Part shown: piece by piece, positions 29,960-63,894 of the stretch
Numbering within the stretch: position 1 is the stretch's first letter
How the letters are laid out: each line of letters starts with the position of its first letter
From: Haliotis rubra
Taxonomy: Eukaryota
Reading direction: 5' to 3'
Assembly (NCBI RefSeq): GCF_003918875.1
Contig: NW_025765714.1
Location: 1,302,001 to 1,366,000, forward strand
Length of the DNA: 64,000 nucleotides
The notes under the pieces: generated by a model
What the model was told of the DNA's origin: nothing
The model's input: the letters and a program-made list of their open reading frames with translations, nothing else
Database searches by the model: none
Made by a program: the position numbers and the translations under genes

Positions 29960-30698
29960 GGGGGCTATTTTAAGCATTTTATTGAGCAAATATGTACAAA
30001 ACTGTTACAAAACAAGCACAAAAATGGAGCTGGACAGTTTGCTCTAATCAGCTGAGGTTGGTAACAGTCCACTATAGCCTTTGCAAAGAACAGGAAATTG
30101 ACCAGTTAGGTTTTAGGTCTAGTAGCAGCATCAGCAACAGTGAGTGGTGTTCAGAGATGATATAAATAACTGCCCATTTAGACAATACTATATACTACAG
30201 ACTATTATCAAGAGATTGACTTCTCAATTGATATTCTTTTACTCCATTGTGATCCAAACATTTCAATGATTAAGAAAACATTTGAAACTGAAAAGAGGGC
30301 TTGGTGCTAAACTTTCCATTTTGAAATGTGAGTCACCTTTATATATTATGACAACAGTGACAGACTACCTGTGCAAATGACACCATTCCAGCTGACAGCT
30401 GCATGAAATATACACCCCTCTCCGGCAGTCAGCGACATATATATACACTTGGCATAGTGACATATGTACACCTGGACACATCACCTGTTTCTCACCGAAA
30501 CACACAAGGTTGGAAGTGAAGGGTTCAGAGCAGACCAACAGTTACCTTGGCACGTCTATTGAAGTTGCCAGAAGAGATCTGATATAGTGGAGCAGGCTAC
30601 TAGCCTGGTTCCTACATTTGTGGTCTGCCTGCACTACGGACAGGGTGCTTGGGTTGGGGATGATCAGCATAAAGAGGACTTAACTGTCCCACTCTCAC
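29960..30698 (-). other. PCMT1: Candidate PCMT1 terminal exon (G-TGA then 3' UTR)
   Basis: Acceptor ttttgtgtacag|GTGA at 30698; minus-strand AATAAA at 29978-29983. The 3' end is approximate. Confidence 0.55.
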
Positions 30699-31103
30699 CT
30701 GTACACAAAATATAACATGAAATATGCTGAAGTGCACTGCAGGTCTACACTAAGATAAAGAACAAAACTATACAATGTATCTTTCACTGTAACAAGTAAT
30801 AAGCTCAGTGTGGTACATGTATCAGAATTAATGTTAACCGTAAAACGTAACTCGGGGGGGGGGAACAGTGGTTAAAACAAATCAACACAATTACAGTCAG
30901 GTGAGAAACATTGTTTCAGCTGGCATGTAGCTCTACAGTTGCCGTGGTGACTACTGTATGGTAAGACCACACTGACTTTAGTGCCGACCTCATCACATCA
31001 AGGTCAAGGCTGTCAGATAAGCATGAAGGTCAGCAAGATTAGACAGTTGGAGACTATCACTGAAACTCGAACTGCGGTCATGGGCATGGCTCCTTGTACT
31101 CAC

Positions 31104-31118
31104 AGCTCTGGCTTGGGT
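31104..31118 (-). CDS. PCMT1: Candidate 15-nt alternative microexon of PCMT1 giving C-terminus RPKPEL
   Basis: cttatgtttcag|ACCCAAGCCAGAGCT|gtgagt, phase-compatible with the AG|gtggag donor at 35779. Confidence 0.6.
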
Positions 31119-32867
31119 CTGAAACATAAGATACAGAAGGTATAGTCTGGGGTTGGCCACTACATCGGTTGTTGATAGTCTCCATACTGCTAAACAGAAA
31201 CAGTTCATTCCAGTTTCTGCAAATAACAAATCCTCAGTTATCCAGTGCCCATCTCCAGCATGATAATACCCTGACTCCTGGGCCCATTTCAGATGCAACA
31301 TCACTCCATCTCTCTCAGTGTATTCAATTCAATTTCTTTTATTCCCACAAACCACCCTCGGTTGTACAGAAACATTTTACAGTATGAATATATAATATGT
31401 AACGTGATCAGTTGGGTAAATAAAAATATTACGCTTTGACGGTTTCATTCACAATCCGTATTGGCTTGAAGTTGAGAACTATCTACAGAGCCACTTCTTA
31501 ACATTAGATCATCAAATATGGACATTCAAAATTGTAGGAGAGAGCTCCCGATGTAGAATTGAATCAGAATATGAGCGGTTCAAAATATAGGGAAGGAAAG
31601 TTCTTATGCTTCCATTTTCAGTATGTAACCATATGCAACAAGGCAACATGGGTCTGGGGATGTTGCTGCCTGTTGCCATCATGGAAGAAAGGTGTAATTT
31701 GATTCCACAGATATTATTGAGCATTTGTGTCTTGCAGGGTATTTATCATACTAAAATGGTGACATGTTAGATAAACAAAAATACAGTCTACGACAAAGTG
31801 GTGTTTTCTTTCAAGATGTAGTTAAAGTATCTTCCCTAAATTAGTTTTCACTTTGATTATTGGGAATGACAACTGAGATACTTCGAAAAACAGTTACACC
31901 ACTGTGTTAGACAGTAAGTTTCTGCAAGTGGCAACTAGATCGTACCTACTAGAGCTCCCCTTACAACAGACAGCACTGACTGTACCTACACAAAAAGACA
32001 ACAGACCTTGCATCAGTCAAAGCTCAACCACAAAACTACAACATGCAAAGTTGGTTGGAGTTGTCTCCCTTCAGGTATTCATTGTAAGGCATGTCTTATG
32101 TATGCAGCAGGGCAAAGAGGCTATGTACAGCGCCAGCTTTTCACCACTATATTTTAGTGAACAACTTGTACAACAAAGAAATAGAATAATCTGCAATGAT
32201 TATTATCTTCAGTACTTCAGTATCAGGAAAACCATTTGACATCATTCAAAACTATCTGTTACACATTCAGCATCACACCAACCTATGTATTGATTGGGTT
32301 TTACATGTGTGGCACCAATCTTCACAATACCAACATAGGTCTTGATTGGATTTTACATAAAACCAACATATACATGTGGACTATTTTTTTTCACGTGTGA
32401 CACCAATTTTCACAATACCAACCTTATGTTTTACACATAACCACAATCTGTATCAATCAGTTGTGATTCTGTTTGTCTTTAGGCACATTTCACAAACAAA
32501 TATTGAACACTTCAAGCCAACCTTAGATTTATCCTAAGTTCCATATTCACAACTATTAAAACAATTTTGATAAAAATAGGTCAGTGTTATGTTTTGTTAT
32601 TTAAAACACCATCACCAATACAAAGCTGTTACACTGAAGCCCAGTGTTCTAGACTGATTTGGTACAATGTACTTACACTGGCACATATACAGACATAATG
32701 GACTTCCTAGACTGCCAAATAACAGACCCTATGTTCTGACTCTATTCACTGAGGGGCACCAGCTATTCCAGCACCACCTGACAAATGACGGGGAGACCTT
32801 ACACAATCACCACCTGACACTGAAGGGAAAACACCTGTGATGTGTGCCCCTATACATGCACCTGTGC

Positions 32868-34129
32868 CAGGGGCGTAGCTCCCATTATAGAAAAAAGCCC
32901 GGGCTTACACATGATTTTTGCTAAAATATTTTGTTTCTAATTCTGCCAAATACGTTATCAGAACAATTAAAAAAAATAGTAGTCCCTCCATGAATCATAT
33001 TGACTACAATATTCTTTGATAACAAAGCATTATCAATACAGTAACAAACCGAAACATGAGTCTCATTAACCTATTCAGACAATGACCTACTTTTCAGCCA
33101 ATCCGATTTTTTCTCGTGTGAAAGTGAAAATAGACAACTATGGTTACACTGAATTCCAATTCCTTGTTTCATAAGAAAATACTATGTACAGATGAATTTT
33201 AATTTTAAACTTTAATAACATCGTATTTCTACATTTTATGGCGATGTGTAGGCAGCATGGCCTTAACCAAGACGTCACAGACTGCCCCCAGTTTGATGAG
33301 GTCGTAAAATGATTCACAAAGCATCTGGCTCACTGGTTACACCTGTTATGTGTTTTTTTGCGCTTTTTCAGTGTAGTTCTGTAACGCACAATGTGATTGA
33401 TATAATATCAAGTCCGTACCAGACTGCCAAACTTTTCTAGCGACAGAGCCTCGTTTTGAGATTGCCAGGTTTCTGTTTGTTAGTGCTCGCTGTATGACAG
33501 AGCACGCTGCACGACATGTTTGCAAGGATTATAAGGAGCATAGTGGTGCAATATACAAGTGCTTAGATGTATCAAATAATACTGATTAATATTTATGTAT
33601 CCAGTTGAATGAATTGGTCTCAAAATTCTGGGCTGGTTATTGTACTAAGTTGCACAATAGGACGGAACACTGTGAACAGGAAACGAGACTGTTGTGTAAT
33701 CAATGTTTTGACTTGCATGTTATTCTTCGGGGCGGTGGGGTAGCCTAGTGGTTAAAGCATTCTCTCGTCACGCTTCAAAGGACCGGGTTTCGATTCCCCA
33801 CATGGGTACAATGTGTGAAGCCCATTTCTGGTGTCCTCCGCCGTGATATTGCTGGAATATTGCTAAAAACGGCGTAAAACCATACTCAGTCAGTCAGTCA
33901 GTGTCATTCTTCGTATATAAATTTGAAGTGTTTTTCTTTCAGTGATGATTGTTTTTCCATCGACATGTATGTGAATGTTTTGCTACAGTCGTAATTATAT
34001 GTGAATCATAACTGAAATGCAGGTATGTACAACGAAAACGTAAGCGTTACTTCATTCTGTAGTCATTCTGAGGGCTTTTAGGTGCAACCTATCAGGCTTA
34101 CACAAAAAAATTGGCTTGCTACGCGCCTG
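32868..34129. mobile_element. Non-autonomous DNA transposon with CAGG-CGTAGC TIRs and 5-bp TSD
   Basis: caggggcgtagc ... gctacgcgcctg, flanked by tgtgc on both sides; contains a nested SINE. Confidence 0.7.
33729..33903 (+). mobile_element. SINE family A
   Basis: Full length, with TSD tgttattcttcg / tgtcattcttcg. Confidence 0.9.
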
Positions 34130-34299
34130 TGTGCCACTGTGATTTATGCCCCAATGCAAGTACTTGTGCTGTGTTTTTTCTGATCTGTGCTGTGGGCAAT
34201 GAAGAAAGGAACTTGCTCATCAAGACAATCTGATGTTGCCGTTTACCTGCCTTGAAGCAAAACTTGGGAACTCACAATTTTTATGCTGTGTTAACAGAA

Positions 34300-35765
34300 G
34301 CAAGCAACGGTGCTGTGTGCCCCAAGTTAGTATGCTGTGTTACCCTAACCAAGCACCTGTGCTGTGTGCCCCAAGTTAGTATGCTGTTACCCTAAGCAAG
34401 CACCTGTGCTGTGTGCCCGAGGTTAGTATGCTGTGTTACCCTAAGCAAGCACCTGTGCTGTGTGCCCCAAGTTAGTAAGCTGTGTTACCCTAACAAAGCA
34501 CCTGTGCTGTGTGCCCCAAGTTAGTAAGCTATGTTACCCTAACCAAGCACCTGTGCCGTGTGCCCCAAGTTAGTATGTTGTGTTACCCTAACCAAGCACC
34601 TGCGCTGTGTGCACCAAGTTAGTATGCTGTGTTACCAGAAGCATGCACCTGTGCTGTGTGCCCCAAGTTAGTATGCTGTTAGTCACAATATGGCTGAAAT
34701 ATTGCCAATGTGACTTAAAACCTTAACTCACTCACTCACTAGTATGCTGTTACCCTAATCAAGCACCTGTGCTGTGTGCCCGAAGTTAGTATGCTGTTAC
34801 CCTAAGCAAGCACCTGTGCTGTGTGCCAAAAAGGTTAGTATGCTGTGTTACCAGAAGCAAGCACCTGTGCTGTGTGCCCAAAGTTAGTATGCTGTTACCC
34901 TAAGCAAGCACCTGTGCTGTGTGCCCCAAGTTAGTATGCTGTTACCCTAAGCAAGCACCTGTGCTGTGTGCCCAAGGTTAGTATGCTGTTATCCTAAGCA
35001 AGCACCTGTACTGTGTGCCCGAGGTTAGTATGCTGTGTTACCCTAACCAAGCACCTGTGCTGTGTGCCCGAAGTTAGTATGCTGTTACCCTAAGCAAGCA
35101 CCTGTGCTGTGTGCCCGAAGTTAGTATGTGCTGTTACCCTAAGCAAGCACCTGTACTGTGTGCCCGAGGTTAGTATGCTGTTACCCTAAGCAAGCACCTG
35201 TGCTGTGTACCCGAAGTTAGTATGCTGTTACCCTAAGCAAGCACCTGTGCTGTGTGCCCCAAGTTAGTATGCTATGTTACTCTAACCAAGCACCTGTGCT
35301 GTGTGCCCCAAGTTAGTAAGCTATGTTACCCTAACCAAGCACCTGTGCTGTGTGCCCGAGGTTAGTATGCTGTGTTACCCTAAGCAAGCACCTGTGCTGT
35401 GTGCCCCAAGGTTAGTATGCTGTGTTACCCTAACCAAGCACCTGTGCTGTGTGCCCGAGGTTAGTATGCTGTGTTACCCTAAGCAAGCACCTGTGCTGTG
35501 TGCCCGAGGTTAGTATGCTATGTTACCCTAAGCATGCACCTGTGCTGTGTGCCCGAAGTTAGTATGCTGTTACCCTAAGCAAGCACCTGTGCTGTGTGCC
35601 CGAGGTTTGTATGCTGTGTTACCCTAAGCATGCACCTGTGCTGTGTGGCCCATGCTAGTAAGCTGTGTTACCAGAAGCATGCACCTGTGCTGTGTGCACC
35701 ATGCTGGTATGCTACATTTCCCTCAGCAAGCACCTGTGCTGTGTGCCCCATGCTAGTACATGCTG
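34300..35765 (+). repeat. 41-44-bp minisatellite abutting the PCMT1 stop codon
   Basis: Unit aagcacctgtgctgtgtgccccaagttagtatgc(tg)tgttaccctaagc; interrupted by a SINE tail at about 34682-34740. Confidence 0.95.
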
Positions 35766-35768
35766 CTA

Positions 35769-35948
35769 CTATCTCCACCTGGGCCACTGCTTGTCCTTGC
35801 TGGTCAGCGGCACATAGATGACTCCCATCAGGTTCTTCCTGACCACCTGGCCATCAAGGGTCTTGTCAATCTGCATCAGCTTCTGGTTCTCTCCTTGACC
35901 TCCAACTGGGATGATCAGCCGTCCTCCTGGTTTCAGCTGATCCACCAA
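35769..35948 (-). CDS. PCMT1: PCMT1 exon 5 (motif III; C-terminus WPRWR*, or internal donor at 35779)
   Basis: ttgcag| [16 protein letters not shown]...[20 protein letters not shown]. The five exons sum to 690 nt (229 aa + stop). Confidence 0.95.
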
Positions 35949-36289
35949 CTGCAAGAATTCAGAGACCTACACTCATTCGATGGTTATAGTGAGCAGTGTG
36001 AGTGGTTGAATGTCTATTACTGAGGTCAGCAAATTCTGGCAACATCACTGCACACTGTAGCTGAAAGCATGAGCCCCAATCTAACAACATGCAATCAGCC
36101 ACATCAAGCACACTTACTACCCTCCCTATTCTAGCTGTCTCTTATAACAAGCTAAAGGTATTGGGAACCCATCCTGACTTTGAATCACTGAATGGGTGTA
36201 AAGTGGTAGCAGTTTAGAAAGTGGTAAGCAACAGGTGTGTAGGACTGACATTCTACTGATGGGTAATATAAGGGTGTGTGGAAGTAATT

Positions 36290-36757
36290 AAAGGACTGTG
36301 TACAGACTGGCACATGCAGGTGTGTGGCAGACAGTTACAAGTCCTCCTGAAGAAAGGTCAATGTAGGACTAGTGCATGACTGTCTACTCACAGGTGCATG
36401 CAAGTGTGAAGAAGACAAAAACAGGACTTTCTGCAGACAGGTACATGCAGGTGTAGTGAAGTACAGGACTGTCTGTAGACAGGTACATGTAGGTGTAGTG
36501 AAATACAGGACTGTCTGTAGACAGGTACATGCAGGTGTGAGGAAGACAGGACTGTCTGTAGACAGGTACATGCAGATGTAGTGAAGTACAGGACTGTCTG
36601 TAGACATGTACATGCAGGTGTGAGGAAGACAGGACTGTCTGTAGACAGGTACATGCAGATGTAGTGAAGTACAGGACTGTCTGTAGACAGGTACATGCAG
36701 GTGTACTGATATACAGGACTGTCTGTAGACAGGTACATGCAGGTGTATGGAAGACAA
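36290..36757 (+). repeat. 41/42-bp minisatellite (PCMT1 intron 4)
   Basis: Unit ggtacatgcaggtgtagtgaagtacaggactgtctgtagaca, alternating with a gtgaggaagac variant. Confidence 0.9.
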
Positions 36758-36789
36758 ATACCGTCCGGTCAACAAGTGTATTGACTCAC

Positions 36790-37002
36790 CGCCTGGGGCA
36801 GCTCCGGGGCTGCAGCTCCCACATGTATAGCATCAAAGGGTGCATCCTCCTCATAGCCTAGTCTGCCATCACCCAGAACAAGTTTCAGCTGACCTCTATC
36901 CAGAAGTTTCCCCAGGCTCTTGTCCTTCCTGACATTGGTGGTAGCCATCTGGATAAGCTCATCGATGTGGTCAATACCCACAGCCACACCCTTCTCCCCC
37001 AC
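36790..37002 (-). CDS. PCMT1: PCMT1 exon 4 (motif II)
   Basis: ctgtag| [16 protein letters not shown]...[28 protein letters not shown] |gtgagt; 213 nt. Confidence 0.95.
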
Positions 37003-37450
37003 CTACAGACAACAGGTGCAATACAGTCAACACGGCGGGCAAACCATTCATATAGACACGTTCCTGTATGTAGTCACATTGATAATTACTAGTTTCAGTT
37101 TAACAATTGCACGTCTGACTCTAATCCTACATGATTATGACACATTTTCCTGTCAAAGGACACTATTGTTAGAAGACATACCAAGATCTTTAGAAGCTTG
37201 TTTCAAGTATTTAGCTAAGGCATATAATAGTTTTCCTGTTTCTTTTTCACACCATAAAAATCATTGTCTATGTTTTAGATTTACATGCTAGGTTTACATC
37301 TGTGTCTGTGAATTTCTGGTCGTTTTAATGTAGTTCGTCAACAGGTTTTTTATATTTTTCAAGTTTATGTGTCATGAATGTATAACTTGTGTTAGTCAAT
37401 ACTAGGCTGAAATACTGCCAATGTGTCTAGAAATATAACTCAATCACTCA

Positions 37451-38802
37451 ATGTAACCAGCCCACCTGACTATCAACACAGAATGAGAGCTAATGTTGTC
37501 TTCATGTTACCAGCCCACCTAACTATCAACACAGAATGAGATAATGTTGTCTTCATGTAAACAGCCCACCTGACTATCAACACAGAATGACGTAATGTTG
37601 TCTTCATGTAACCAGCCCACCTGACTATCAACACAGAATGAGCTAATGTTGTCTTCATGTAACCAGCCCACCAGACTATCAACACAGAATGAGCTAATGT
37701 TGTCTTCATGTAACCAGCCAACCTGACTATCAACACAGAATGAGCTAATGTTGTCTTCATGTAACCAGCCCACCTAACTATCAACACAGAATGAGCTAAT
37801 ATTGTTTTCATGTAACCAGCCCACCTGACTATCAACACAGAATGAGCTAATGTTGTCTTCATGTAACCAGCCCACCTGACTATCAACACAGAATGAGCTA
37901 ATGTTGTCTTCATGTAACCAGCCCACCTGACTATCAACACAGAATGAGCTAATATTGTCTTCATGTAACCAGCCCACCTGACTATCAACACAGAATGAGC
38001 TAATATTGTCTTCATGTAACCAGCCCACCTGACTATCAACACAGAATGAGCTAATGTTGTCTTCATGTAACCAGCCCACCTGACTATCAACACAGAATGA
38101 GCTAATGTTGTCTTCATGTAACCAGCCCACCTAACTATCAACACAGAATGAGCTAATGTTGTCTTCATGTAACCAGCCCACCTGACTATCAACACAGAAT
38201 GAGCTAATATTGTCTTCATGTAACCAGCCCACCTGACTATCAACACAGAATGAGCTAATGTTGTCTTCATGTAACCAGCCCACCTGACTATCAACACAGA
38301 ATGACGTAATGTTGTCTTCATGTAGCCAGCCCACCTAACTATCAACACAGAATGAGCTAATGTTGTCTTCATGTAACCAGCCCACCTAACTATCAACACA
38401 GAATGAGCTAATGTTGTCTTCATGTAACCAGCCCACCTAACTATCAACACAGAATGAGCTAATGTTGTCTTCATGTAACCAGCCCACCTGACTATCAACA
38501 CAGAATGAGCTAATGTTGTCTTCATGTAACCAGCCCACCTGACTATCAACACAGAATGAGCTAATGTTGTCTTCATGTAACCAACCCACCCATCCTAACT
38601 ATCAACACAGAATGAGCTAATGTTGTCTTCATGTAACCAGCCCACCTGACTATCAACACAGAATGAGCGAATATTGGTTTCATGTAACCAGCCCACCTGA
38701 CTATCAACACAGAATGAGCTAATGTTGTCTTCATGTAACCAGCCCACCTGACTATCAACACAGAATGAGCGAATATTGTTTTCATGTAACCAGCCCACCT
38801 AA
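37451..38802 (+). repeat. 51-bp minisatellite, about 26 copies (PCMT1 intron 3)
   Basis: Unit ctgactatcaacacagaatgagctaatgttgtcttcatgtaaccagcccac. Confidence 0.97.
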
Positions 38803-39015
38803 CAAACAACATAATCATTGCAGTCTGTAACAAGCTTAGACAAGATAAACCTGTGATTTTGGGTGAGTGAGAAGTATCTCAGTTATACCATGGCTATGTC
38901 GCAGATGCCAAAGGACAAGGTTGTTTGCTGCCATGCCTTGGTGAAACCCTCCAGCATAGACATGGTGTTGGCACACCCATAAAGCGTTCACTCACAAGAT
39001 CCTGCCACAGCTAAG

Positions 39016-39980
39016 AATATCCTGTTTTATCATACAGTGGATAGCGTTCTCGGCAGGATAAAGCCAACAGATATTTTCGGTATCCGTTGGGGTCATATAC
39101 GGATATCGATGCAAATTACAGAGGGCATATGCATATTTTAGGGACTAATTTTACAGTGTAAAGAAACATGGCGTCACGTGTCAGCTATCGCGTCCGGATT
39201 GACGGCCGTGGTTACGGTACTGTCAGTGCTTTGATCCAAGACCATTCATGTCTGGGTATGATAGATGAAGAGGATTGCGAAGACAGAAATTCATAGGCTT
39301 ACGAAGATACCAACACCAGTTCCCCGAATGACTGTCAGTGTTAGCGAGTGTACGGCACAGGAATCCAGATGCGGAATGTCCGCCGAACGTTTAAGTGTAT
39401 TTGTTGTTCAAAAGGTTAATTGAAGGTTTCTGAAGATCCACACGAGTTTGTAGTAATTTTTCAAAAGATTTGTTGACAACAATACAAGCTTTTACATAAA
39501 AAACTGAGAACTAGATGACCTAACGCAGTCATTTGAGTGATCAGAAGAAAATTGTGTCACTGCGCGCGTGACGTAACATATTATTACGCACATATTTGTG
39601 ATGTCATAGATATCTATGCACATTCCACGAAGTTTAGTGTCATGATTTGTGGCAATTGAAACATTTTTTTTAAATTATAAAGTAAAAGTGAGTGAGTGTG
39701 TATGGTTTTACACCACTTTTAGCAATATTCCAGCAATATCACTGCGGGGTACACCAGAAATGGGCTTCACGCATTGTGCCCATGTGGGGAATCGAACCTG
39801 GGTCTTCAGCGTGACGAGCCAACGCTAAACCATTAGGCTACCCCACCGCCCCTATAAAGTAAGTATGACATTGTATGATAAAATAGGTTATCACACTCGT
39901 GTGTTTTGGGATGGTTAACAATGTTTATTCCTAATGCAGGATATTAACCATCCCAAAACACTCGCGTGATAACCAATATT
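39016..39980. mobile_element. Probable non-autonomous element with inverted repeats (class uncertain), with nested SINE
   Basis: cctgttttatcataca (39021-39036) vs tgtatgataaaatagg (39872-39887), a further ggttatcac/gtgataacc hairpin to about 39975, and a CpG-rich interior. Confidence 0.5.
39687..39852 (-). mobile_element. SINE family A
   Basis: Full-length reverse copy with TSD tataaagtaa. Confidence 0.9.
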
Positions 39981-40055
39981 GACCACCCTTTCCCCTTTGG
40001 CTTTTACACTGAGCATGTGTGAAGGAGGACACATCTCCTGCCCCCATCTGCCTAC

Positions 40056-40160
40056 CATAAGTGCCATGCAAGCTGTGAGGTAGCCACTGCCTGATCCCAC
40101 GTCCAGGGCACGCCCACCCTCCTTCAGGTTCTCCGACAGCAGCTCCAGGGCATGTGCATG
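40056..40160 (-). CDS. PCMT1: PCMT1 exon 3 (SAM-binding motif I)
   Basis: ccag| [35 protein letters not shown] |gtaggc; 105 nt. Confidence 0.95.
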
Positions 40161-41149
40161 CTGGCATGTACAAGAGAGAAGCTCATCACCAGCAGCATAG
40201 TAGTATCACAATGAACTTACCATGGTTCTCAGCAATCTTTCAAAAACAGAAAGGTGTAAGCATCCCTGACAATATGAAAGATAATTAATTAAATAGTCCT
40301 ATTCCACAAACCATTTGTAGCGCTACGATAATCTCAGGTATAAATCTCAAACTTTAGCATAGACTTACAACATATACATTTATTAATAAGTCCATATTCT
40401 CACCCTTTCTGCAGGTGAATCACAACCCTGAAACATTTGTTTCCAAATTTCTGATAGCAAAGATGGGATATTGAAGGTAAGAAACATATAGGCTGCAAAG
40501 CAGCCATATTGGAATTGAGCCTGAAATAAAAAGAGTTTCTGTTGGGTACTACTTTCAGTGTCTAGAAACAAATGTGGCCTTTCTGTATTACAATTACAAA
40601 TTACAGGGATAATTGTTGTCATCAAAATAAGTCTACGATATCAAACAAAGTTGTTTAACAAGGGTGTAGCTGAGGCTTTTTTTCAAGTGCACGCAATATA
40701 TGAGACATAATATTGTGATGCAATGTTAGCAGGTACTCATGTCAGATCAGTTCCTGTCTTCAGGCTCTTTTCCCTGGATTTGGACGGAATATGTCTGCTA
40801 TTTTAACTTTAGGTCATGGTGTGTCCATAACATTACCGCAAGAGTGGACACGGCAGACTCTAAATACACGAGGCATTTCATAGAATAGGAGTAGCTTCCC
40901 TTTGAAAAAGGACAAATATTCGAGGAGACAGACCAATTGATTGAAGCAAAACATAATCAGTAACACTGCTTTAAAAAATATTACTATGAACATATTACAT
41001 GTAGTAATCTGTCTTTCAATCCATGTTGTACTTATGCCACACAAAAAGTAAGTTTCTGTTGGAACAAGGCTTGCTAAATATTTCTAAGTCAGGACATTTA
41101 CCATCCCAGAACAATCATGATATTCTTTACTGATATGATAATTACTTAC

Positions 41150-41286
41150 CATGTGGGGTGCACTAATTGTTACAGCGTATCCTATACTCTGGGGCGAGTC
41201 ATTGTACGGGTTGAACTTGCAGAAGTGTACTCGATCTACAGCCTTCATGACTTGAACAACTTGTGGAGATTTGATTATGCCATTCG
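41150..41286 (-). CDS. PCMT1: PCMT1 exon 2
   Basis: tttcag| [45 protein letters not shown] |gtaagt; PIMT pre-I motif TISAPHM. Confidence 0.95.
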
Positions 41287-41486
41287 CTGAAACAGTCGAA
41301 CTATGCTACATGACAAAAAGAAGTGGGATCTTCACATTTCACATCATATTCAAGGTGCCTATTGTCAACAAAAACTGAAACTGCCCCTTACTGAAATATT
41401 ATATACACTGATGTACAGAAATTGTGAACCCGTCTGTACAATGAGGGCAGGAGTGAGAGCGTGGTAGGTTTGATTCATCTGTGGAA

Positions 41487-43511
41487 AGTGTTTCAGGTAC
41501 ACCACAGCATGTCAGCTGTAAACAGTGTTTCAGGTACACCCCAGCATGTCAGCTGTAAACAGTGATTCAGGTACACCCCAGCATGTCAGCTGTAAACAGT
41601 GTTTCAGGTATACCACAGCATGTCAGCTGTAAACAGTGTTTCAGGTACACCACAGCATGTCAGCTGTAAACAGTGTTTCAGGTACACCACGGCATGTCAG
41701 CTGTAAACAGTGTTTCAGGTATACCACAGCATGTCAGCTGTAAACAGTGTTTCAGGTACACCACGGCATGACAGCTGTAAACAGTGTTTCAGGTATACCA
41801 CAGCATGTCAGCTGTAAACAGTGTTTCAGGTATACCACAGCATGTCAGCTGTAAACAGTGTTTCAGGTACACCACAGCATGTCAGCTGTAAACAGTGTTT
41901 CAGGTACCATACCCCAGCATGTCAGCTGTAAACAGTGTTTCAGGTACACCACAGCATGTCAGCTGTAAACAGTGTTTCAGGTACACCACAGCATGTCAGC
42001 TGTAAACAGTGTTTCAGGTACACCACAGCATGTCAGCTGTAAACAGTGTTTCAGGTACACCACAGCATGTCAGCTGTAAACAGTGTTTCAGGTACACCAC
42101 AGCATGTCAGCTGTAAACAGTGTTTCAGGTATACCACAGCATGTCAGCTGTAAACAGTGTTTCAGGTACACCACAGCATGTCAGCTGTAAACAGTGTTTC
42201 AGGTACACCACAGCATGTCAGCTGTAAACAGTGTTTCAGGTATACCACAGCATGTCAGCTGTAAACAGTGTTTCAGGTACACCACAGCATGTCAGCTGTA
42301 AACAGTGTTTCAGGTACACCACAGCATGTCAGCTGTAAACAGTGTTTCAGGTACACCCACAGCATGTCAGCTGTAAACGGTGTTTCAGGTACACCACAGC
42401 ATGTCAGCTGTAAACAGTGTTTCAGGTACACCACAGCATGTCAGCTGTAAACAGTGTTTCAGGTATACCCCAGCATGTCAGCTGTAAACAGTGTTTCAGG
42501 TACACCACAGCATGTCAGCTGTAAACAGTGTTTCAGGTACACCACAGCATGTCAGCTGTAAACAGTGTTTCAGGTACACCACGGCATGTCAGCTGTAAAC
42601 AGTGTTTCAGGTACACCACAGCATGTCAGCTGTAAACAGTGTTTCAGGTACACCACATGGCATGTCAGCTGTAAACAGTGTTTCAGGTATACCACAGCAT
42701 GTCAGCTGTAAACAGTGTTTCAGGTACACCACAGCATGTCAGCTGTAAACAGTGTTTCAGGTACACCACAGCATGTCAGCTGTAAACAGTGTTTCAGGTA
42801 CACCACAGCATGTCAGCTGTAAACAGTGTTTCAGGTATACCCCAGCATGTCAGCTGTAAACAGTGTTTCAGGTACACCACAGCATGTCAGCTGTAAACAG
42901 TGTTTCAGGTACACCACAGCATGTCAGCTGTAAACAGTGTTTCAGGTACACCACAGCATGTCAGCTATAAACAGTGTTTCAGTTTCAGGTACACATGTCA
43001 GCTGTAAAGACAGTGTAAACAGTGTTTCAGGTATACCACAGCATGTCAGCTGTAAACAGTGTTTCAGGTATACCACAGCATGTCAGCTGTAAACAGTGTT
43101 TCAGGTATACCACAGCATGTCAGCTGTAAACAGTGTTTCAGGTACACCACAGCATGTCAGCTGTAAACAGTGTTTCAGGTACACCACAGCATGTCAGCTG
43201 TAAACAGTGTTTCAGGTATACCACAGCATGTCAGCTGTAAACAGTGTTTCAGGTACACCACAGCATGTCAGCTGTAAACAGTGTTTCAGGTACACCACAG
43301 CATGTCAGCTGTAAACAGTGTTTCAGGTATACCACAGCATGTCAGCTGTAAACAGTGTTTCAGGTACACCACAGCATGTCAGCTGTAAACAGTGTTTCAG
43401 GTATACCACAGCATGTCAGCTGTAAACAGTGTTTCAGGTACACCACAGCATGTCAGCTGTAAACAGTGTTTCAGGTACACCACGGCATGTCAGCTGTAAA
43501 CAGTGTTTCAG
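41487..43511 (+). repeat. 37-bp minisatellite, about 55 copies (PCMT1 intron 1)
   Basis: Unit tacaccacagcatgtcagctgtaaacagtgtttcagg. Confidence 0.97.
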
Positions 43512-44738
43512 TTTCAACAAATGCAGTATTTCAGCTATAAAAGGGCAATCCTCTGGAAGAGACAATCCAGTGATTGACATAATCACCATTGATCTTTGCA
43601 ACTGACATACGATGACAAGCATCATATTGTCACTCGATGTTGGGACAAGCATTGGTTGCTGAAGTCTGATTCTAGCCCACAGCTTCACAGGTGGACATAT
43701 TAAGTATTGCTGATGGCAAAGGTAAACAGTACATTGCTGATGGCAAAGGTAAACAGTAATACTGTCTTAGCATTGTTGAACCAAGACATCAGTGTATTGA
43801 AACCTAACTGGGTGAAATAAATGCACTGTAAGATATTTATCAGTGGGATGTTGCTTAATTTGGATGGAGTAAAATATGAAAGAAATATGCAAATGTACAT
43901 GTTTTTATTCATTTTGATTTCTTCTAGATAAACATCGTATCGTTCTGTGGTTTGAATATTTTTACTAAAGTTAAATACTCTTAATAATACACTTATACAA
44001 AACTGTTAACTGTTGATTCTGATCTGGTAAGTAATAAGTGTGCTCAGTGAAATAAAATCTTTTTTCTTTCTTTTTACAATATTTTGAATACAGACCAGCA
44101 AATACTTTTGACACTAACAGCTATGATCGTGATCGAGGCAAAGAAATTCACGTAAGTGGATGTAGATATCAGTCCTAGCCCCACAGTAGTTCCAAATACA
44201 CCACAAACAAGTACTTTGACATTTCATTTTCAAGACTCATCATCACCTTCTTATCATTTCCAATTACTGAAATGTCAATCCCTTCTGTCATGTCGAAATA
44301 CAAACTTGAGAAATCTTATAATGCAATACATTTTGACATAAATAACATAGAAGTAAATCATGAGATTAGTTGGAATATAATTTAAGACAACGCTAAGGAC
44401 CCTCAGCACAAGCTTTCAGAAACACATTTAATACTTTCATGTACAAGCTTCAATAATTCCCAGATATAATACTTTTCAACAATTCATTTACCAGCTTCTG
44501 CACATGTCACACAAATAAACCTACAAACCACCGCAACATGATTTCTGTGATTAGGTATGCACACGTCATCAGTTGTGAAACAATAATAGAGCAAACAATA
44601 TGTTTGCTACTACACCTAGCCTAATCCTAGCCGTATTGTGTAAGGCATGGGTTTTGAAACATAAAGTCATATGAAGGCGACAGGCATATATTGATATGTG
44701 GAGCTAAGCATACAAACATACTTAAAACAGGCAGGAAG

Positions 44739-45153
44739 TAGTGGTGTTCCGATTAATTGAAATAATCGCAAGATTGGTCGAAGTGACCAAACAACCAAGC
44801 AATCGATCACATTTTCTCATGATCGAAAATAAACGATTTTGGAACTACTGTTTAAGTCTTTGAAATACTTGACAATGGAACATATCTTAGAAGTTGTCAG
44901 GGCCTGAAAACATGTTTTATTCTTAGAAAACTCACTTCGTTAACTGAAAAGTCATGACTGATTATTTCTCTAAGACTCCAGGAAGTTTATGTTCATGATA
45001 TATTAGTAGTAAGTTGCATCATGTTATACTTTTCTGCAATAACAACCTGGGTAGGAAAATCTGAAAAATGACGCTTACCAATTTTTTTCAACGATTGTTC
45101 GTTGGTAATGAAGCAATCATCAGTTGTAAGATTTCAACCAATTCCCAACACTA
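44739..45153. mobile_element. hAT-like MITE, copy 2 (PCMT1 intron 1)
   Basis: Shares ccgattaattgaaataatcg...aaacaaccaagcaat with copy 1; flanks gcaggaag / gtaggaac match 6/8. Confidence 0.8.
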
Positions 45154-45760
45154 GTAGGAACATGATGTAAGTGTGACTGCCTCTTCACATTACTAAATTA
45201 TGTTATATGTCTCATTTGTTATTTCAAAATCCAAGATAAACATGTTAAATAATTCCTACCATGTTTTGCATAACAATTTTATGGATGAAATGTTCGAACT
45301 TTACAACTGGTGTATTAAAGATTTGGTGAACATATTGTAAAGTTGTGCCCAATATTTATTTATCTCAGGTATAATTCAAACAACTGAATCTGTTACATAC
45401 AAGTGCACAATCATACTACTACAACCACACAAGGCTAAATATATTCTCATTCATGTTAATAATCTAAACACCAACGAAAATGCATAATGTGCATCTGTGC
45501 ATGATCAGCAGAATAATAACACTGATGACATCAAACAACCAAATAACCAAAATTAAACATATTCTCTAACCAACCAGGAGTGCGTCCAATCGTGAATTTC
45601 AAACATCTAAAATATGTAACTGCTCTTAAAAATCATAATCAAATGAAACGAAGGCTATTTCTAACATTCCACACATAGGCTCGTGTGGAATGTCACAGAA
45701 GCTTGTCGAACACAAAACAAAACAATAACACATCTATTGATGTCGATGCATTTCGCTTAC

Positions 45761-45815
45761 CATGCAAGTTGTCTACGAGGTTGGAATTGCTGGTACCGCT
45801 CGATCTCCACGCCAT
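45761..45815 (-). CDS. PCMT1: PCMT1 exon 1 from the canonical ATG (in-frame upstream ATG at 45890)
   Basis: MAWRSSGTSNSNLVDNLH, the typical PIMT N-terminus; donor G|gtaagc; 55 nt. Confidence 0.93.
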
Positions 45816-46654
45816 TGTTGACCGGGGCACCACAGCAAAGACGAAAGTCACTGAACTTAAAACGACAGCTTTCAGTCTGTCCCAAAACATCACATATCCC
45901 AATGATTCCAGCTAATGGCCATCGCCATTACTCGGCGAAACTACAAAATACAAGAAAAGCATTGCTCATGTAGTTACTATAATTTGAAAGTTTAGTTAAT
46001 AATGTACTGCTTGCAACTGTTGTCAAATTGCCATTGGTATATTTGATGACGCTTACGCGTTTAAACTGACACGCGCACTCACAGACCAGCCCCCATTACT
46101 GACCTTGACCGCCGACGATGACCTTCACCTTTGGGCGACAGGTGCTCATCATTCACGAATGGACGATAAAAGCATACCGCTACATTGACGTACATTCAAA
46201 AGACGCACACTCTTGTAGGTTGGAATTTCGGAGACCATTTATCAAGGAAATAATACGCTTCGAGTAGAAAATATCTCGTGACCTTTGCCGCACGGATAAC
46301 GTAAAAATAAACTGCCCCTATGTCTGTGTATAACATGAGCTATGGAGCCTCTATAAATATCTGTAAGGAAAATATTTTGCCTTCCTTTACGGAGCCAAGA
46401 TCAATTTATATAAAATTTCCTTCTCCTGAAAAAGAATGTTTACCGTTCATCTTTTTTCAACAGATATTCGGGTTGATCACAAATTATCGCTTTTTCCATA
46501 AGCATTAAAGTAACATGGATCACAAAATCAGTCAATCTAACATTGAAGAACCAGACGTAGCATAGCTTGAACTGATTTGATGAACAGACAAGTTTCATAT
46601 ATAAATGTGAAATACATATCCAGTAGGTGTTTTAATCTATAAAAAATAATAGTG

Positions 46655-57285: not shown

Positions 57286-60200
57286 CATGGCTGATCCTCC
57301 CAACCACAACACTGAACAGCCTCTACATGGCTGATGTTCCCCATCACAACACTGAACAGCCTCTACATGGCTGATGTTCCCCATCACAACACTGAACAGC
57401 CTCTACATGGCTGATGTTCCCCATCACAACACTGAACAGCCTCTACATGGCTGATGTTCCCCATCACAACACTGAACAGCCTCTACATGGCTGATGTTCC
57501 CAACCACAACACTGAACAGCCTCTACATGGCTGATGTTCCCCATCACAACACTGAACAGCCTCTACATGGCTGATGTTCCCCATCACAACACTGAACAGC
57601 CTCTACATGGCCGATCCTCCCAACCACAACACTGAACAGCCTCTACATGGCTGATGTTCCCCATCACAACACTGAACAGCCTCTACATGGTTGATGTTCC
57701 CCATCACAACACTGAACAGCCTCTACATGGCTGATGTTCCCCATCACAACACTGAACAGCCTCTACATGGCTGATGTTCCCCATCACAACACTGAACAGC
57801 CTCTACATGGTTGATGTTTCCCCATCACAACACTGAACAGCCTCTACATGGCTGATGTTCCCCATCACAACACTGAACAGCCTCTACATGGCTGATGTTT
57901 CCCCATCACAACACTGAACAGCCTCTACATGGTTGATGTTCCCCATCACAACACTGAACAGCCTCTACATGGCTGATGTTCCCCATCACAACACTGAACA
58001 GCCTCTACATGGCTGATCCTCCCAACCACAACACTGAACAGCCTCTACATGGCTGATGTTCCCCATCACAACACTGAACAGCCTCTACATGGCTGATGTT
58101 CCCCATCACAACACTGAACAGCCTCTACATGGCTGATGTTCCCCATCACAACACTGAACAGCCTCTACATGGCTGATGTTCCCCATCACAACACTGAACA
58201 GCCTCTACATGGCTGATGTTCCCAACACAACACTGAACAGCCTCTACATGGCTGATGTTCCCAACCACAACACTGAACAGCCTCTACATGGCTGATGTTC
58301 CCCATCACAACACTGAACAGCCTCTACATGGCTGATGTTCCCCATCACAACACTGAACAGCCTCTACATGGCTGATGTTCCCATCACAACACTGAACAGC
58401 CTCTACATGGCTGATGTTCCCAACCACAACACTGAACAGCCTCTACATGGTTGATGTTCCCCATCACAACACTGAACAGCCTCTACATGGCTGATGTTCC
58501 TAACCACAACACTGAACAGCCTCTACATGGCTGATGTTCCCATCACAACACTGAACAGCCTCTACATGGCTGATGTTCCCCATCACAACACTGAACAGCC
58601 TCTACATGGCTGATGTTCCCCCAACCACAACACTGAACAGCCTCTACATGGCTGATGTTCCCCATCACAACACTGAACAGCCTCTCATGGCTGATGTTTC
58701 CATCACAACACTGAACAGCCTCTACATGGCTGATGTTCCCAACCACAACACTGAACAGCTTCTCTACATGGCTGATGTTCCATCACAACACTGAACAGCC
58801 TCTACATGGCTGATGTTCCCCCACAACACTGAACAGCTCTCACTGAACAACACTGAACAGCCTTACATGGCTGATGTTCCCATCACAACACTGAACAGCC
58901 TCTACATGGCTGATGTTCCCCATCACAACACTGAACAGCCTCTACATGGCTGATGTTCCCCATCACAACACTGAACAGCCTCTACATGGCTGATGTTCCC
59001 AATCACAACACTGAACAGCCTCTACATGGCTGATGTTCCCCATCACAACACTGAACAGCCTCTACATGGCTGATGTTCCCCATCACAACACTGAACAGCC
59101 TCTACATGGCTGATGTTCCCCATCACAACACTGAACAGCTCTACATGGCTGATGTTCCCCATCACAACACTGAACAGCCTCTACATGGCTGATGTTCCCC
59201 ATCACAACACTGAACAGCCTCTACATGGCTGATGTTCCCCATCACAACACTGAACAGCCTCTACATGGCTGATGTTCCCATCACAACACTGAACAGCCTC
59301 TACATGGCTGATGTTCCCCATCACAACACTGAACAGCCTCTACATGGCTGATGTTCCCCATCACAACACTGAACAGCCTCTACATGGCTGATGTTCCCAT
59401 CACAACACTGAACAGCCTCTACATGGCTGATGTTCCCCATCACAACACTGAACAGCCTCTACATGGCTGATGTTCCCCATCACAACACTGAACAGCCTCT
59501 ACATGGCTGATGTTCCCCATCACAACACTGAACAGCCTCTACATGGCTGATGTTCCCCATCACAACACTGAACAGCTTCTACATGGCTGATGTTCCCCAT
59601 CACAACACTGAACAGCCTCTACATGGCTGATGTTCCCCATCACAACACTGAACAGCCTCTACATGGCTGATGTTCCCCATCACAACACTGAACAGCCTCT
59701 ACATGGCTGATGTTCCCCATCACAACACTGAACAGCCTCTACATGGCTGATGTTCCCCATCACAACACTGAACAGCCTCTACATGGCTGATGTTCCCCAT
59801 CACAACACTGAACAGCTTCTACATGGCTGATGTTCCCCATCACAACACTGAACAGCCTCTACATGGCTGATGTTCCCCATCACAACACTGAACAGCCTCT
59901 ACATGGCTGATGTTCCCATCACAACACTGAACAGCCTCTACATGGCTGATGTTCCCCCCATCACAACACTGAACAGCCTCTACATGGCTGATGTTCCCCA
60001 TCACAACACTGAACAGCCTCTACATGGCTGATGTTCCCCATCACAACACTGAACAGCCTCTACATGGCTGATGTTCCCCATCACAACACTGAACAGCCTC
60101 TACATGGCTGATGTTCCCAACCACAACACTGAACAGCCTCTACATGGCTGATGTTCCCCATCACAACACTGAACAGCCTCTACATGGCTGATGTTCCCCA

Positions 60201-63790: not shown

Positions 63791-63894
63791 GTGCGAGCTT
63801 GTGATGTAAGGAAGTTTCTTCACAACCATATTCAATGTAAAAAATTCTATCAAAAACTGTTGCAGTTTTTTATAGAACTTTCAGTGCAGCATTT

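What the first reader, a model, noticed from the sequence alone, without database searches (positions are those of the whole stretch)
30695..45890. Parts list for a secretory-pathway (ER) isoform of the repair enzyme PIMT: signal-like N-extension plus KDEL-like tail
Seen: an in-frame upstream ATG (45890) adds a hydrophobic 25-aa leader, and an alternative 3' splice path ends the protein in KPEL. Known: PIMT is regarded as cytosolic. Mammalian PCMT1 has an -RDEL splice isoform, and from memory an annotated hydrophobic N-extended form also exists. Inference: finding both features in a protostome suggests an ancient switch that sends isoaspartate repair into the ER lumen, where long-lived secreted and matrix proteins are made. 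Caveats: Pro at -3 falls outside the classic [KRHQSA][DENQ]EL pattern, and a luminal SAM supply would be needed.
Basis: partly seen in the sequence, partly recalled or inferred. Interest (0 to 1): 0.85.

Follow-up and report, generated by a model that had tools for sequence, protein, structure and literature searches.

The report
Abalone PIMT repair enzyme: secretory-type isoform
The abalone gene for the protein-repair enzyme PIMT makes an mRNA that carries both a signal-peptide-like leader and a KDEL-like tail (-KPEL); the same two-part design recurs across bilaterian animals, which makes the 30-year-old puzzle of PIMT's "ER tail" directly testable, although entry into the ER is not shown.

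Summary
The minus strand carries a five-exon PCMT1/PIMT orthologue whose spliced products are identical to Haliotis rubra RefSeq models (X3 -RWR, X2 leader plus -RPKPEL). An in-frame ATG at 45890 adds 25 signal-peptide-like residues. The AG|GT donor after 35779 joins to 31118 and gives -RPKPEL*.

RNA contigs from three runs in two studies show exactly this joint. By length, they also contain exon 1 from about 45940, so the leader and the tail lie on one assembled mRNA.

The "microexon" is really the start of a terminal exon of about 1.16 kb. A third RefSeq tail, -YSQCCLL, resembles a CaaX box.

In a survey of 172 animal PIMT sequences, 80% carry a hydrophobic extension directly before MAW and 40% end x-x-[DE]-[LF]. 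Thirty-five transcript contigs carry both. The two-part design is therefore bilaterian-wide.

Translation from the first AUG and entry into the ER are untested. Proline at -3 (KPEL) is the one residue that abolished ER retention in a human reporter screen.

The isoforms are already in RefSeq, and the mammalian -RDEL form has been known since 1992. The same reader noted both parts on this same window (s1-335101, s1-335170).

The parts
46030..46140 (-). Conserved block upstream of exon 1 with donor-like sites (CAAG|GTCAGT near 46103, TCT|GTGAGT near 46081). It is probably a non-coding first exon or promoter.
   Evidence: It is near-identical in four Haliotis species, whereas the sequence between it and 45941 diverges. 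The exon boundaries are inferred, not shown.
45761..45940 (-). Exon 1: a 50-nt 5'UTR segment, the leader and the first 18 canonical codons. Acceptor ttttgtag|, donor CATG|GTAAGC.
   Evidence: All 14 sampled words are held by 8 runs. The contig length upstream of exon 5 is 635-637 nt, which equals exons 1-4 counted from 45940. The acceptor is conserved.
45890..45928 (-). 12-codon uORF (MAMAISWNHWDM) with a strong AUG context. Its TGA overlaps the leader ATG (ATGTGATG).
   Evidence: Read from the sequence. It is conserved in four Haliotis species with only two variable sites. Its function is inferred.
45816..45890 (-). 25-codon signal-peptide-like leader MFWDRLKAVVLSSVTFVFAVVPRST. The AUG context is gtgAUGu (weaker).
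   Evidence: It has a 15-residue uncharged run and a 9-residue hydropathy maximum of 2.52. The reading frame and ATG are kept in four species.
45813..45815 (-). Canonical start codon (MAWRSSG...), in the strong context acaAUGg.
   Evidence: It aligns with residue 1 of human PIMT 1I1N after Met removal.
41150..41286 (-). Coding exon 2.
   Evidence: GT-AG borders; the product equals the RefSeq model.
40056..40160 (-). Coding exon 3 (SAM-binding motif LDVGSGSG).
36790..37002 (-). Coding exon 4.
35779..35948 (-). Coding exon 5 up to the internal donor AG|GT, which splits the Arg codon after QWP.
   Evidence: Contigs align to 35779-35949 and then jump to 31118. The donor is conserved in four species.
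35769..35778 (-). Read-through end of exon 5 (..R WR TAG), giving the -RWR isoform (RefSeq X3).
   Evidence: No contig in the four runs continues past 35779; this absence proves nothing.
31961..31985 (-). Alternative terminal coding segment giving -R YSQCCLL* (RefSeq X1), with a CaaX-like end.
   Evidence: It is conserved in four species. It has no depth in the four runs laid.
29960..31118 (-). Terminal exon of the KPEL isoform. Coding part 31118-31103 (A CCC AAG CCA GAG CTG), TGA at 31102-31100, a 3'UTR of about 1.1 kb, and AATAAA at 29983-29978.
   Evidence: The joint 35779->31118 and unspliced cover down to about 30004 are seen in X1, X15 and X17. The poly(A) signal is. Only synonymous changes occur in PKPEL among four species. 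The 3' end at about 29960 is inferred.

Best explanation
This is the abalone (Haliotis rubra-type) orthologue of PCMT1/PIMT.

SHOWN. Its mRNA starts upstream of 45940 and holds two in-frame AUGs. AUG1 (45890) opens a 25-residue leader with a signal-peptide-like n/h/c layout. AUG2 (45815) is the canonical MAW start. An internal donor after 35779 is spliced to a terminal exon at 31118, so the assembled transcript in three RNA runs encodes leader + PIMT + -RPKPEL. RefSeq also models -RWR (read-through) and -RYSQCCLL.

INFERRED. One mRNA gives two enzymes. Ribosomes that start at AUG2 make the classical cytosolic enzyme; AUG2 has the better context and is favoured further by a conserved 12-codon uORF that ends on AUG1. 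Ribosomes that start at AUG1 make a precursor that enters the ER, where the leader is probably removed. The best-fitting cleavage site is T-M-A|W, with the invariant Ala of MAW at -1. The x-x-E-L tail then engages the KDEL receptor, so isoaspartate repair would also operate in the early secretory pathway. In abalone the Pro at -3 probably weakens retrieval, so part of the enzyme may be secreted.
For: - Gene model and identity to RefSeq isoforms.
- Family membership: Pfam PCMT 266.9 bits, human PIMT 1I1N E=3e-91.
- Splice joint 35779->31118 in contigs of 1845-1935 nt from 3 runs in 2 studies, with zero depth over 31201-32800 of the skipped intron, so the runs are RNA.
- Exon 1 words 14/14 in those runs. 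The contig length arithmetic places their 5' ends at 45940-45942.
- PKPEL differs only by synonymous changes in four Haliotis species; both ATGs, the uORF and the reading frame are conserved.
- Survey of 172 animal PIMTs: 138 have an extension (median 26 aa). 87% of these have a hydrophobic 9-residue window of 1.8 or more, against 24% of random stop-free ORFs. 82% have net positive charge before that window. The hydrophobic core ends a median of 5 residues before the Met. The residue before the Met is T/V/A/I/G/S/C in 117 of 138. Sixty-eight end in [DE][LF], with K/R/H at -4 in 48.
- 35 transcript-like contigs carry both parts. Two were inspected and are intronless mRNAs with a 5'UTR, an in-frame stop, the leader and -SAKDEL or -KKFEL; in both, AUG2 carries G at -3 and +4, whereas AUG1 lacks the +4 G.
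- Skate and cuttlefish transcripts with both parts were seen on dozens of contigs.
- METTL9 is a precedent for a SAM-dependent methyltransferase with a signal peptide in the ER lumen (PMC12313917).
Against: - No evidence here that AUG1 is translated. Its context is weaker, and a strong uORF lies in front of it.
- AKPEL-type tails failed: the -3 position tolerated every residue except proline in human cells (PMC2140024). No other lineage in the survey has Pro there.
- Within Haliotis the leader's pN is about equal to or above pS against two species.
- Basic residues follow the hydrophobic core (PRST, then WR), which is not ideal for a c-region. No trained signal-peptide predictor was available.
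- Mammalian -RDEL isozyme II was purified from cytosol (established literature, from memory).
- The field states that PCMT1 lacks a signal sequence, and its secretion was not blocked by brefeldin A (PMC12187236).
- A SAM supply in the animal ER lumen is not established.
- Leader and tail are linked by short-read assembly, not by single molecules.
- The association of the two parts on transcript contigs is weak (odds ratio 3.4, p=0.048).
Confidence: 0.5

Rival explanations
1. The leader is effectively 5'UTR. The uORF and weak context make AUG1 initiation negligible, all enzyme is cytosolic, and -KPEL is just one of several functionally neutral or cytosol-acting C-termini, like mammalian isozyme II in red cells.
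For: AUG1 context is gtgAUGu against acaAUGg for AUG2, and a strong-context uORF stops on AUG1. Pro at -3 is non-functional in human cells. The leader's pN/pS is not low against two Haliotis species. The 5'UTR segment is more conserved than the leader. PMC12187236 and PMC7859441 report no signal peptide on the standard forms.
Against: A stop-free hydrophobic extension placed directly before MAW occurs in 80% of 172 animal sequences across many phyla without sequence similarity: 87% are hydrophobic against 24% of random ORFs. The [DE][LF] ending is at 40%, against roughly 1.6% expected from my approximate residue frequencies. PKPEL shows only synonymous change.
Confidence: 0.25
2. The leader is a true signal peptide but -KPEL does not bind the KDEL receptor. 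The abalone AUG1 product would then be secreted (haemolymph, mucus, shell or extracellular matrix) rather than ER-resident.
For: Pro at -3 abolished retention in the only systematic screen. Abalone is the only surveyed lineage with Pro there. Extracellular PCMT1 is reported in mammals (PMC12187236).
Against: PKPEL is kept by synonymous-only change in four species whose flanking intron diverges. The terminal E-L and K at -4 are retained as in functional tails. Mollusc KDEL-receptor specificity is unknown.
Confidence: 0.15
3. The extension is an uncleaved membrane anchor (ER or mitochondrial outer membrane) that tethers PIMT, either with the catalytic domain in the cytosol or as a type II luminal protein. 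It is neither a cleaved signal nor a mitochondrial presequence.
For: Basic residues flank both sides of the hydrophobic core. The rat PCMT1 X2 extension has a hydrophobic stretch of about 27 residues after a long Gly/Ser-rich N-region.
Against: In abalone the uncharged run is 15 residues and the survey median is 12, which is too short to span a bilayer. A KDEL-like tail has no role on a cytosolic domain. The leader contains Asp and has few Arg, unlike a mitochondrial presequence.
Confidence: 0.1

Closest known systems
Mammalian PCMT1 isozyme II (-RDEL) versus isozyme I (-RWK) (MacLaren 1992 and Potter 1992, as cited in PMC7859441)
   Same: The enzyme is the same (E=3e-91 to human 1I1N). The alternative C-termini diverge right after QW(S/P)R; one arises by read-through (-RWK / -RWR) and one by splicing to a tiny coding segment ending in E-L. 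The position of the human donor inside the Arg codon is from my memory and was not tested here.
   Different: The abalone tail is -KPEL (Pro at -3), which lies outside PROSITE [KRHQSA]-[DENQ]-E-L and outside the relaxed code of Raykhel 2007. Abalone has a third, Cys-rich tail. In three RNA runs the KPEL form is the assembled transcript.
Vertebrate pcmtl (l-isoaspartyl protein carboxyl methyltransferase, like) of skates, teleosts and squamates
   Same: It has a hydrophobic leader ending ..(L)(T/V)RT directly before MAW, plus -RDEL, -RGEL or -GHEL, both on the same transcripts. This is the same two-part layout as abalone.
   Different: It is a separate paralogue in which every retrieved model carries a leader. 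Sequence similarity in the leader itself is nil apart from the P/T-R-x-T ending.
N-terminally extended PCMT1 models of mammals (rat XP_063138121.1; the human 285-aa RefSeq form is from memory)
   Same: An upstream in-frame AUG adds a hydrophobic segment that ends directly before MAW (..LRVCFA|MAW).
   Different: The mammalian extension is 58 residues, with a long Gly/Ser-rich N-region and a longer hydrophobic stretch that looks more like an anchor. I found no functional study of it.
Dual targeting by alternative translation initiation (leaky scanning or uORF control)
   Same: There are two in-frame AUGs on one mRNA, the first in a weaker context and encoding a targeting peptide, with a uORF upstream.
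   Different: The mechanism is inferred here from sequence only. There are no initiation data.
METTL9, a seven-beta-strand methyltransferase with an N-terminal signal peptide in the ER/Golgi (PMC12313917)
   Same: It is a SAM-dependent methyltransferase fold delivered to the secretory pathway by a cleavable leader.
   Different: It is an unrelated family with constitutive targeting and no KDEL-type tail. That paper attributes its main roles to non-catalytic functions.

Membership tests
PIMT / PCMT (Pfam PF01135, EC 2.1.1.77) | Profile match above the curated cut-off over the whole domain | tested here: met
   PF01135 scores 266.9 bits against a cut-off of 20.3, over residues 34-247 and profile positions 2-209 of 210.
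PIMT / PCMT (Pfam PF01135, EC 2.1.1.77) | Close sequence relation to a solved PIMT, with the SAM-binding motifs intact ([35 protein letters not shown]) | tested here: met
   Human 1I1N/1KR5 E=3.2e-91, aligned end to end; all motifs are present in the alignment.
PIMT / PCMT (Pfam PF01135, EC 2.1.1.77) | Isoaspartyl methyl-ester forming activity | not testable with these tools
   This needs an enzyme assay.
PCMT1 isozyme-II-type alternative C-terminus | A splice from an internal donor just after QW(S/P)R to a short terminal coding segment | tested here: met
   The donor AG|GT after 35779 is joined to 31118 in RNA contigs of 3 runs. The same three isoforms are modelled in 4 Haliotis species.
KDEL-type ER retrieval signal | PROSITE pattern [KRHQSA]-[DENQ]-E-L at the extreme C-terminus | tested here: not met
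   The tail is K-P-E-L; Pro at -3 lies outside the pattern (pattern quoted in PMC2140024).
KDEL-type ER retrieval signal | Relaxed experimental code: -4 basic or aromatic, -3 any residue except Pro, -2 E (D weaker), -1 L or F | tested here: not met
   Positions -4 K, -2 E and -1 L fit. Position -3 is Pro, the single excluded residue. Relatives do fit: KDEL, KFEL, KAEF, KNEL, RDEL and others.
KDEL-type ER retrieval signal | The bearer is a soluble protein delivered to the ER lumen | not testable with these tools
   This depends on use of AUG1 and on translocation.
Cleavable ER signal peptide | Positively charged n-region followed by an uncharged hydrophobic h-region of 7-15 residues | tested here: met
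   MFWDRLK has net charge +1. AVVLSSVTFVFAVVP is a 15-residue run without D/E/K/R/N/Q/H, with a 9-residue hydropathy maximum of 2.52.
Cleavable ER signal peptide | A c-region with small residues at -1 and -3 of a cleavage site (von Heijne rule) | tested here: inconclusive
   T-M-A|W fits (Ala at -1, Thr at -3). Across 138 sequences the residue before Met is T/V/A/I/G/S/C in 117. R-S-T|M does not fit. No trained predictor was available.
Cleavable ER signal peptide | Translated, and cleaved on translocation | not testable with these tools
   Only transcription of the leader is shown.
CaaX prenylation box (for the -YSQCCLL isoform) | Cys at -4, aliphatic residues at -3 and -2, X at -1 (Leu implies geranylgeranylation) | tested here: inconclusive
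   C-C-L-L has Cys at -4 and Leu at -2 and -1, but Cys at -3. It is conserved in 4 species. CaaX-like tails also occur in prawn (CSLL), cricket (CAAS) and acorn worm (CQVL). There is no RNA support in the four runs laid.

The most novel reading that the evidence does not exclude
PIMT has an ancestral, bilaterian-wide secretory-pathway form made from the same mRNA as the cytosolic enzyme. Initiation at an upstream AUG adds a signal peptide that is cut at the invariant x-M-A|W, so the conserved 'MAW' doubles as start codon and signal-peptidase site. An alternatively spliced x-x-[DE]-[LF] tail holds the enzyme in the ER. A third, CaaX-like tail would send the cytosolic form to membranes. If so, isoaspartate repair of secretory and matrix proteins begins inside the ER, and the reported 'unconventional secretion' of PCMT1 would need re-examination.
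Probability: 0.35. Interest if true: 0.8.

Novelty: new member of a known kind. Interest (0 to 1): 0.6.

Why it matters
Since 1992 the -RDEL tail of mammalian PIMT isozyme II has been an oddity, because an ER-retrieval signal sat on an enzyme with no known way into the ER. Recent papers still state that PCMT1 lacks a signal sequence and call its release unconventional (PMC12187236). One notes only that N-extended isoforms "may be generated" (PMC7859441).

Here, an abalone transcript carries both missing parts. A survey also shows the same pairing in many phyla, often on single mRNA contigs. This turns the puzzle into a short list of experiments: initiation-site mapping, translocation and cleavage assays, and tail swaps.

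If the luminal form is real, repair of isoaspartate in long-lived secreted and matrix proteins, and a SAM supply to the ER lumen, become concrete questions. If it is not, the strong conservation of a hydrophobic in-frame extension and of an [DE][LF] tail still needs another explanation.

Tried and rejected
- **Microexon path.** The path 31118-31104 spliced to 30698 (also in note s1-335101) is not used by any contig; all three run unspliced from 31118 to about 30004.
- **-RWR and -CCLL forms.** The four runs' contigs show neither read-through past 35779 nor the exon at 31985-31961. Contigs drop rare variants, so this is not evidence of absence.
- **Look-ups of the 257-aa isoforms.** These failed because only the longest product per gene is indexed. 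The 259-aa isoforms worked.
- **Mitochondrial presequence.** Rejected on composition: an Asp, few Arg, and a 15-residue uncharged run.
- **pN/pS of the leader within Haliotis.** Too few sites and equivocal: 0.018/0.158 against H. asinina, 0.071/0.053 and 0.089/0.054 against the other two.
- **Rfam scan of the very deep repeat at about 33729-33900.** No match.
- **Paper searches.** Searches for PCMT1 with 'signal peptide', 'alternative translation initiation' or 'secretory pathway', and for KPEL with 'KDEL receptor', found no study of a signal-bearing PIMT or of KPEL. Only the open-access subset is searchable.
- **Not available or not run.** No trained signal-peptide predictor was available, so only rule-based features were computed. 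I did not run a structure prediction, because it would not decide targeting.
- **Single read-laying run.** The 5' end rests on the word index and on contig-length arithmetic.


Full report
**What is in the window**

The minus strand between about 46140 and 29960 holds one gene. Stop-to-stop frames and GT-AG borders give five coding exons:
- 45890-45761
- 41286-41150
- 40160-40056
- 37002-36790
- 35948-35772, followed by a TAG stop

The product is a protein-L-isoaspartate O-methyltransferase. Pfam PCMT scores 266.9 bits against a cut-off of 20.3. Human PIMT 1I1N aligns end to end at E=3.2e-91 with all SAM-binding motifs present.

The spliced proteins are residue-for-residue identical to two Haliotis rubra RefSeq models: XP_046564112.1 (isoform X3..QWPRWR) and XP_046564111.1 (isoform X2..QWPRPKPEL). 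Isoform X1 (..QWPRYSQCCLL) is encoded at 31985-31961. The window is therefore from H. rubra or a genome with an identical PIMT. The introns are filled with tandem arrays.

The ATG at 45890 is in frame with the canonical ATG at 45815 and adds MFWDRLKAVVLSSVTFVFAVVPRST. An in-frame TAG 21 nt upstream bounds this extension.

The sequence AG|GT after 35779 splits the Arg codon that follows QWP. The acceptor tttcag| before 31118 continues A-CCC-AAG-CCA-GAG-CTG-TGA, which reads R-P-K-P-E-L-stop.

**RNA evidence**

- The word index finds all 14 sampled 31-mers of exon 1 (45762-45940) in eight runs of one organism label, from two studies.
- I laid four of these runs on 30001-36000. One contig each in X1, X15 and X17 (1935, 1884 and 1845 nt) joins 35779 to 31118. 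The skipped 4660 nt are bounded CT..AC on the plus strand, which is GT..AG on the gene strand.
- Each contig then continues unspliced to about 30004-30061.
- The stretch 31201-32800 of the skipped intron has zero depth, so these runs behave as RNA.
- The part of each contig upstream of exon 5 is 635-637 nt. Exons 1-4 counted from 45940 sum to 635 nt.
- The contigs therefore begin at the conserved acceptor ttttgtag|45940. They contain the uORF, the leader ATG, the whole coding sequence, -RPKPEL* and a 3'UTR of 1.1 kb.
- A contig that stops exactly at an acceptor is what a de Bruijn assembly gives when several upstream sequences join there. The TSS therefore lies further upstream. A strongly conserved block at 46030-46140 with donor-like sites is the likely first exon or promoter (inference).
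- AATAAA at 29983-29978 fits the contig ends.

Three caveats apply:
- These are short-read assemblies, not single molecules.
- The contigs are 95-99% like the window, so they may come from another individual or a sister species.
- The -RWR and -CCLL forms were not seen, which proves nothing for contigs.

It is simply the start of the terminal exon.

**Conservation within Haliotis**

I fetched the orthologous loci of three other species and aligned them.
- The exon-1 acceptor, both ATGs and the reading frame of the leader are all kept.
- A 12-codon uORF is also kept. It starts at ATG 45928 in a strong context, and its TGA overlaps the leader ATG as ATGTGATG.
- The leader changes conservatively (K>R, T>S, V>L, A>S, S>A/E). 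However, pN is not below pS against two of the three species, so residue identity is not under visible constraint. This is typical of signal peptides but also compatible with neutrality.
- The PKPEL codons differ only by two synonymous changes, while the intron in front of them diverges strongly.
- CCLL is also kept.

**Conservation across animals**

Two database searches and the representative search gave 172 animal PIMT sequences with a recognisable MxW..G start.

*Leader*
- 138 sequences (80%) carry an extension of 13-97 residues (median 26) that ends directly before that Met.
- 87% of these have a 9-residue hydropathy window of 1.8 or more, against 24% of random stop-free ORFs of the same lengths.
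- 82% have net positive charge before the window.
- The hydrophobic core ends a median of 5 residues before the Met.
- The residue just before the Met is T, V, A, I, G, S or C in 117 of 138.
- With the invariant Ala of MAW, this makes x-M-A|W a good fit to the -3/-1 rule for signal peptidase (established rule; the site itself is my inference).

*Tail*
- 68 of 172 sequences end in [DE][LF], against about 1.6% expected from my approximate residue frequencies.
- K, R or H sits at -4 in 48 of these.
- Examples are KDEL (Mactra and other bivalves), KEYDEL (cuttlefish), KKFEL (Biomphalaria), NKYDL (Elysia), TNEL and KNEL (spiders, horseshoe crabs), GRNEL (termite), and RDEL, RGEL and GHEL (vertebrate pcmtl).

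*Both on one transcript*
- Of 71 transcript-like contigs (about 5 kb or shorter, encoding the whole protein), 35 carry both parts, 19 the leader only, 6 the tail only and 11 neither. The odds ratio is 3.4 and p=0.048, a weak association.
- Two such contigs were inspected. They are intronless mRNAs with a 5'UTR, an in-frame stop, the leader and -SAKDEL or -KKFEL; AUG2 has G at both -3 and +4, whereas AUG1 lacks the +4 G.
- Skate and cuttlefish forms with both parts were seen on dozens of contigs.
- A rat PCMT1 model carries a 58-residue extension with a hydrophobic stretch ending ..CFA|MAW.

**How it most likely works**

*Shown:* the mRNA, its two in-frame AUGs, the uORF, the splice choice and the comparative pattern.

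*Inferred:* dual targeting from one mRNA.
- AUG2 always reads AUGG, and in abalone it has A at -3. A ribosome that has translated the short uORF, which stops on AUG1, would more easily resume at AUG2, 75 nt further on. Both points favour the classical cytosolic enzyme.
- Ribosomes that start at AUG1 would make a precursor with a 7-residue charged n-region, a hydrophobic core of 14-15 residues and a Pro-containing c-region. This is the length class of cleaved signal peptides, not of membrane anchors.
- In the lumen, the C-terminal x-x-E-L would be read by the KDEL receptor.

I put this whole chain at about 0.5.

**Points against**

[quoted passage not shown] Abalone is the only surveyed lineage with Pro there.
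- Abalone may therefore retain the enzyme poorly and secrete it, or its receptor may differ. This cannot be decided here.
- Translation from AUG1 is untested.
- Basic residues after the hydrophobic core are not ideal for a c-region.
- Mammalian isozyme II is a cytosolic protein in red cells (from memory).
- A luminal SAM supply in animals is unproven. METTL9 shows that a SAM-dependent methyltransferase can be signal-targeted to the ER lumen (PMC12313917).

**Comparison with what is known**

The closest known case is mammalian PCMT1 isozyme II (-RDEL), cited as a possible ER form since 1992 (PMC7859441).
- That paper ran TargetP on the standard zebrafish forms, found no signal, and remarked only that N-extended isoforms "may be generated".
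- A 2025 paper states that PCMT1 lacks a signal sequence and is secreted unconventionally (PMC12187236).
- I found no paper that describes a signal-bearing PIMT (open-access subset only).

The abalone isoforms themselves are already in RefSeq as automatic models. I therefore file the locus as a new member of a known kind. I note that the bilaterian-wide pairing of leader and tail appears not to have been pointed out in the papers searched.

**Earlier notes**

Two notes by the same reader lie on this same window. s1-335170 (the N-terminal extension) agrees with what I found. s1-335101 (a microexon toggling three C-termini) is only partly right. There are three C-termini, but they are -RWR, -RPKPEL and -RYSQCCLL, and the microexon splice is not seen.

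Noticed in passing
window 45890-45928 (minus): A 12-codon uORF (MAMAISWNHWDM) in strong AUG context. Its stop overlaps the leader start as ATGTGATG. It is almost invariant in four Haliotis species and more conserved than the leader itself. It is a candidate control of the AUG1/AUG2 choice.
   Followed up: partly
L005:45-137 (snail mRNA contig, SRR26439020): An out-of-frame uORF starts upstream of AUG1, runs over it, and stops in a TGATG that overlaps AUG2. This is the same stop-start overlap as in abalone but at the other AUG. It may be coincidence.
   Followed up: no
window 31961-31985 (minus): A third alternative tail, -YSQCCLL, resembles a CaaX prenylation box and is conserved in four Haliotis species. 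CaaX-like PIMT tails also occur in a prawn (CSLL), a cricket (CAAS), an acorn worm (CQVL) and a periwinkle (CTAW). It has no RNA depth in the four runs laid.
   Followed up: partly
window 46030-46140 (minus): A block conserved across four Haliotis species with two donor-like sites, a CCAAT box and a TGACGC-like motif. It is probably the promoter or a non-coding first exon of the PIMT gene.
   Followed up: partly
window 41487-43511, 37451-38811, 36421-36747, 34740-35748 and 34282-34679: Large tandem arrays lie inside the PIMT introns: 37 nt x 54 copies, 51 nt x 26, 42 nt x 8 and 49/96 nt x 21. The 49-nt array starts about 20 nt after the -RWR stop codon, so a read-through 3'UTR would run into it.
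   Followed up: partly
window about 33729-33900: A dispersed repeat in the last intron has summed contig depth of about 1e5 in all four RNA runs, with many different flanks. It has no Rfam match and is probably an abundant SINE-like element.
   Followed up: partly
window 57286-63791: A 40-nt satellite of about 160 copies at 94-96% identity explains the strong negative GC skew at the right end of the window.
   Followed up: partly
P0072 cluster (JGI metagenome contigs up to 465 kb): A PIMT from environmental contigs, host organism unidentified, also starts MAWRSSG behind an Arg- and Ala-rich hydrophobic extension. N-extended PIMT may therefore not be limited to the animals surveyed.
   Followed up: no
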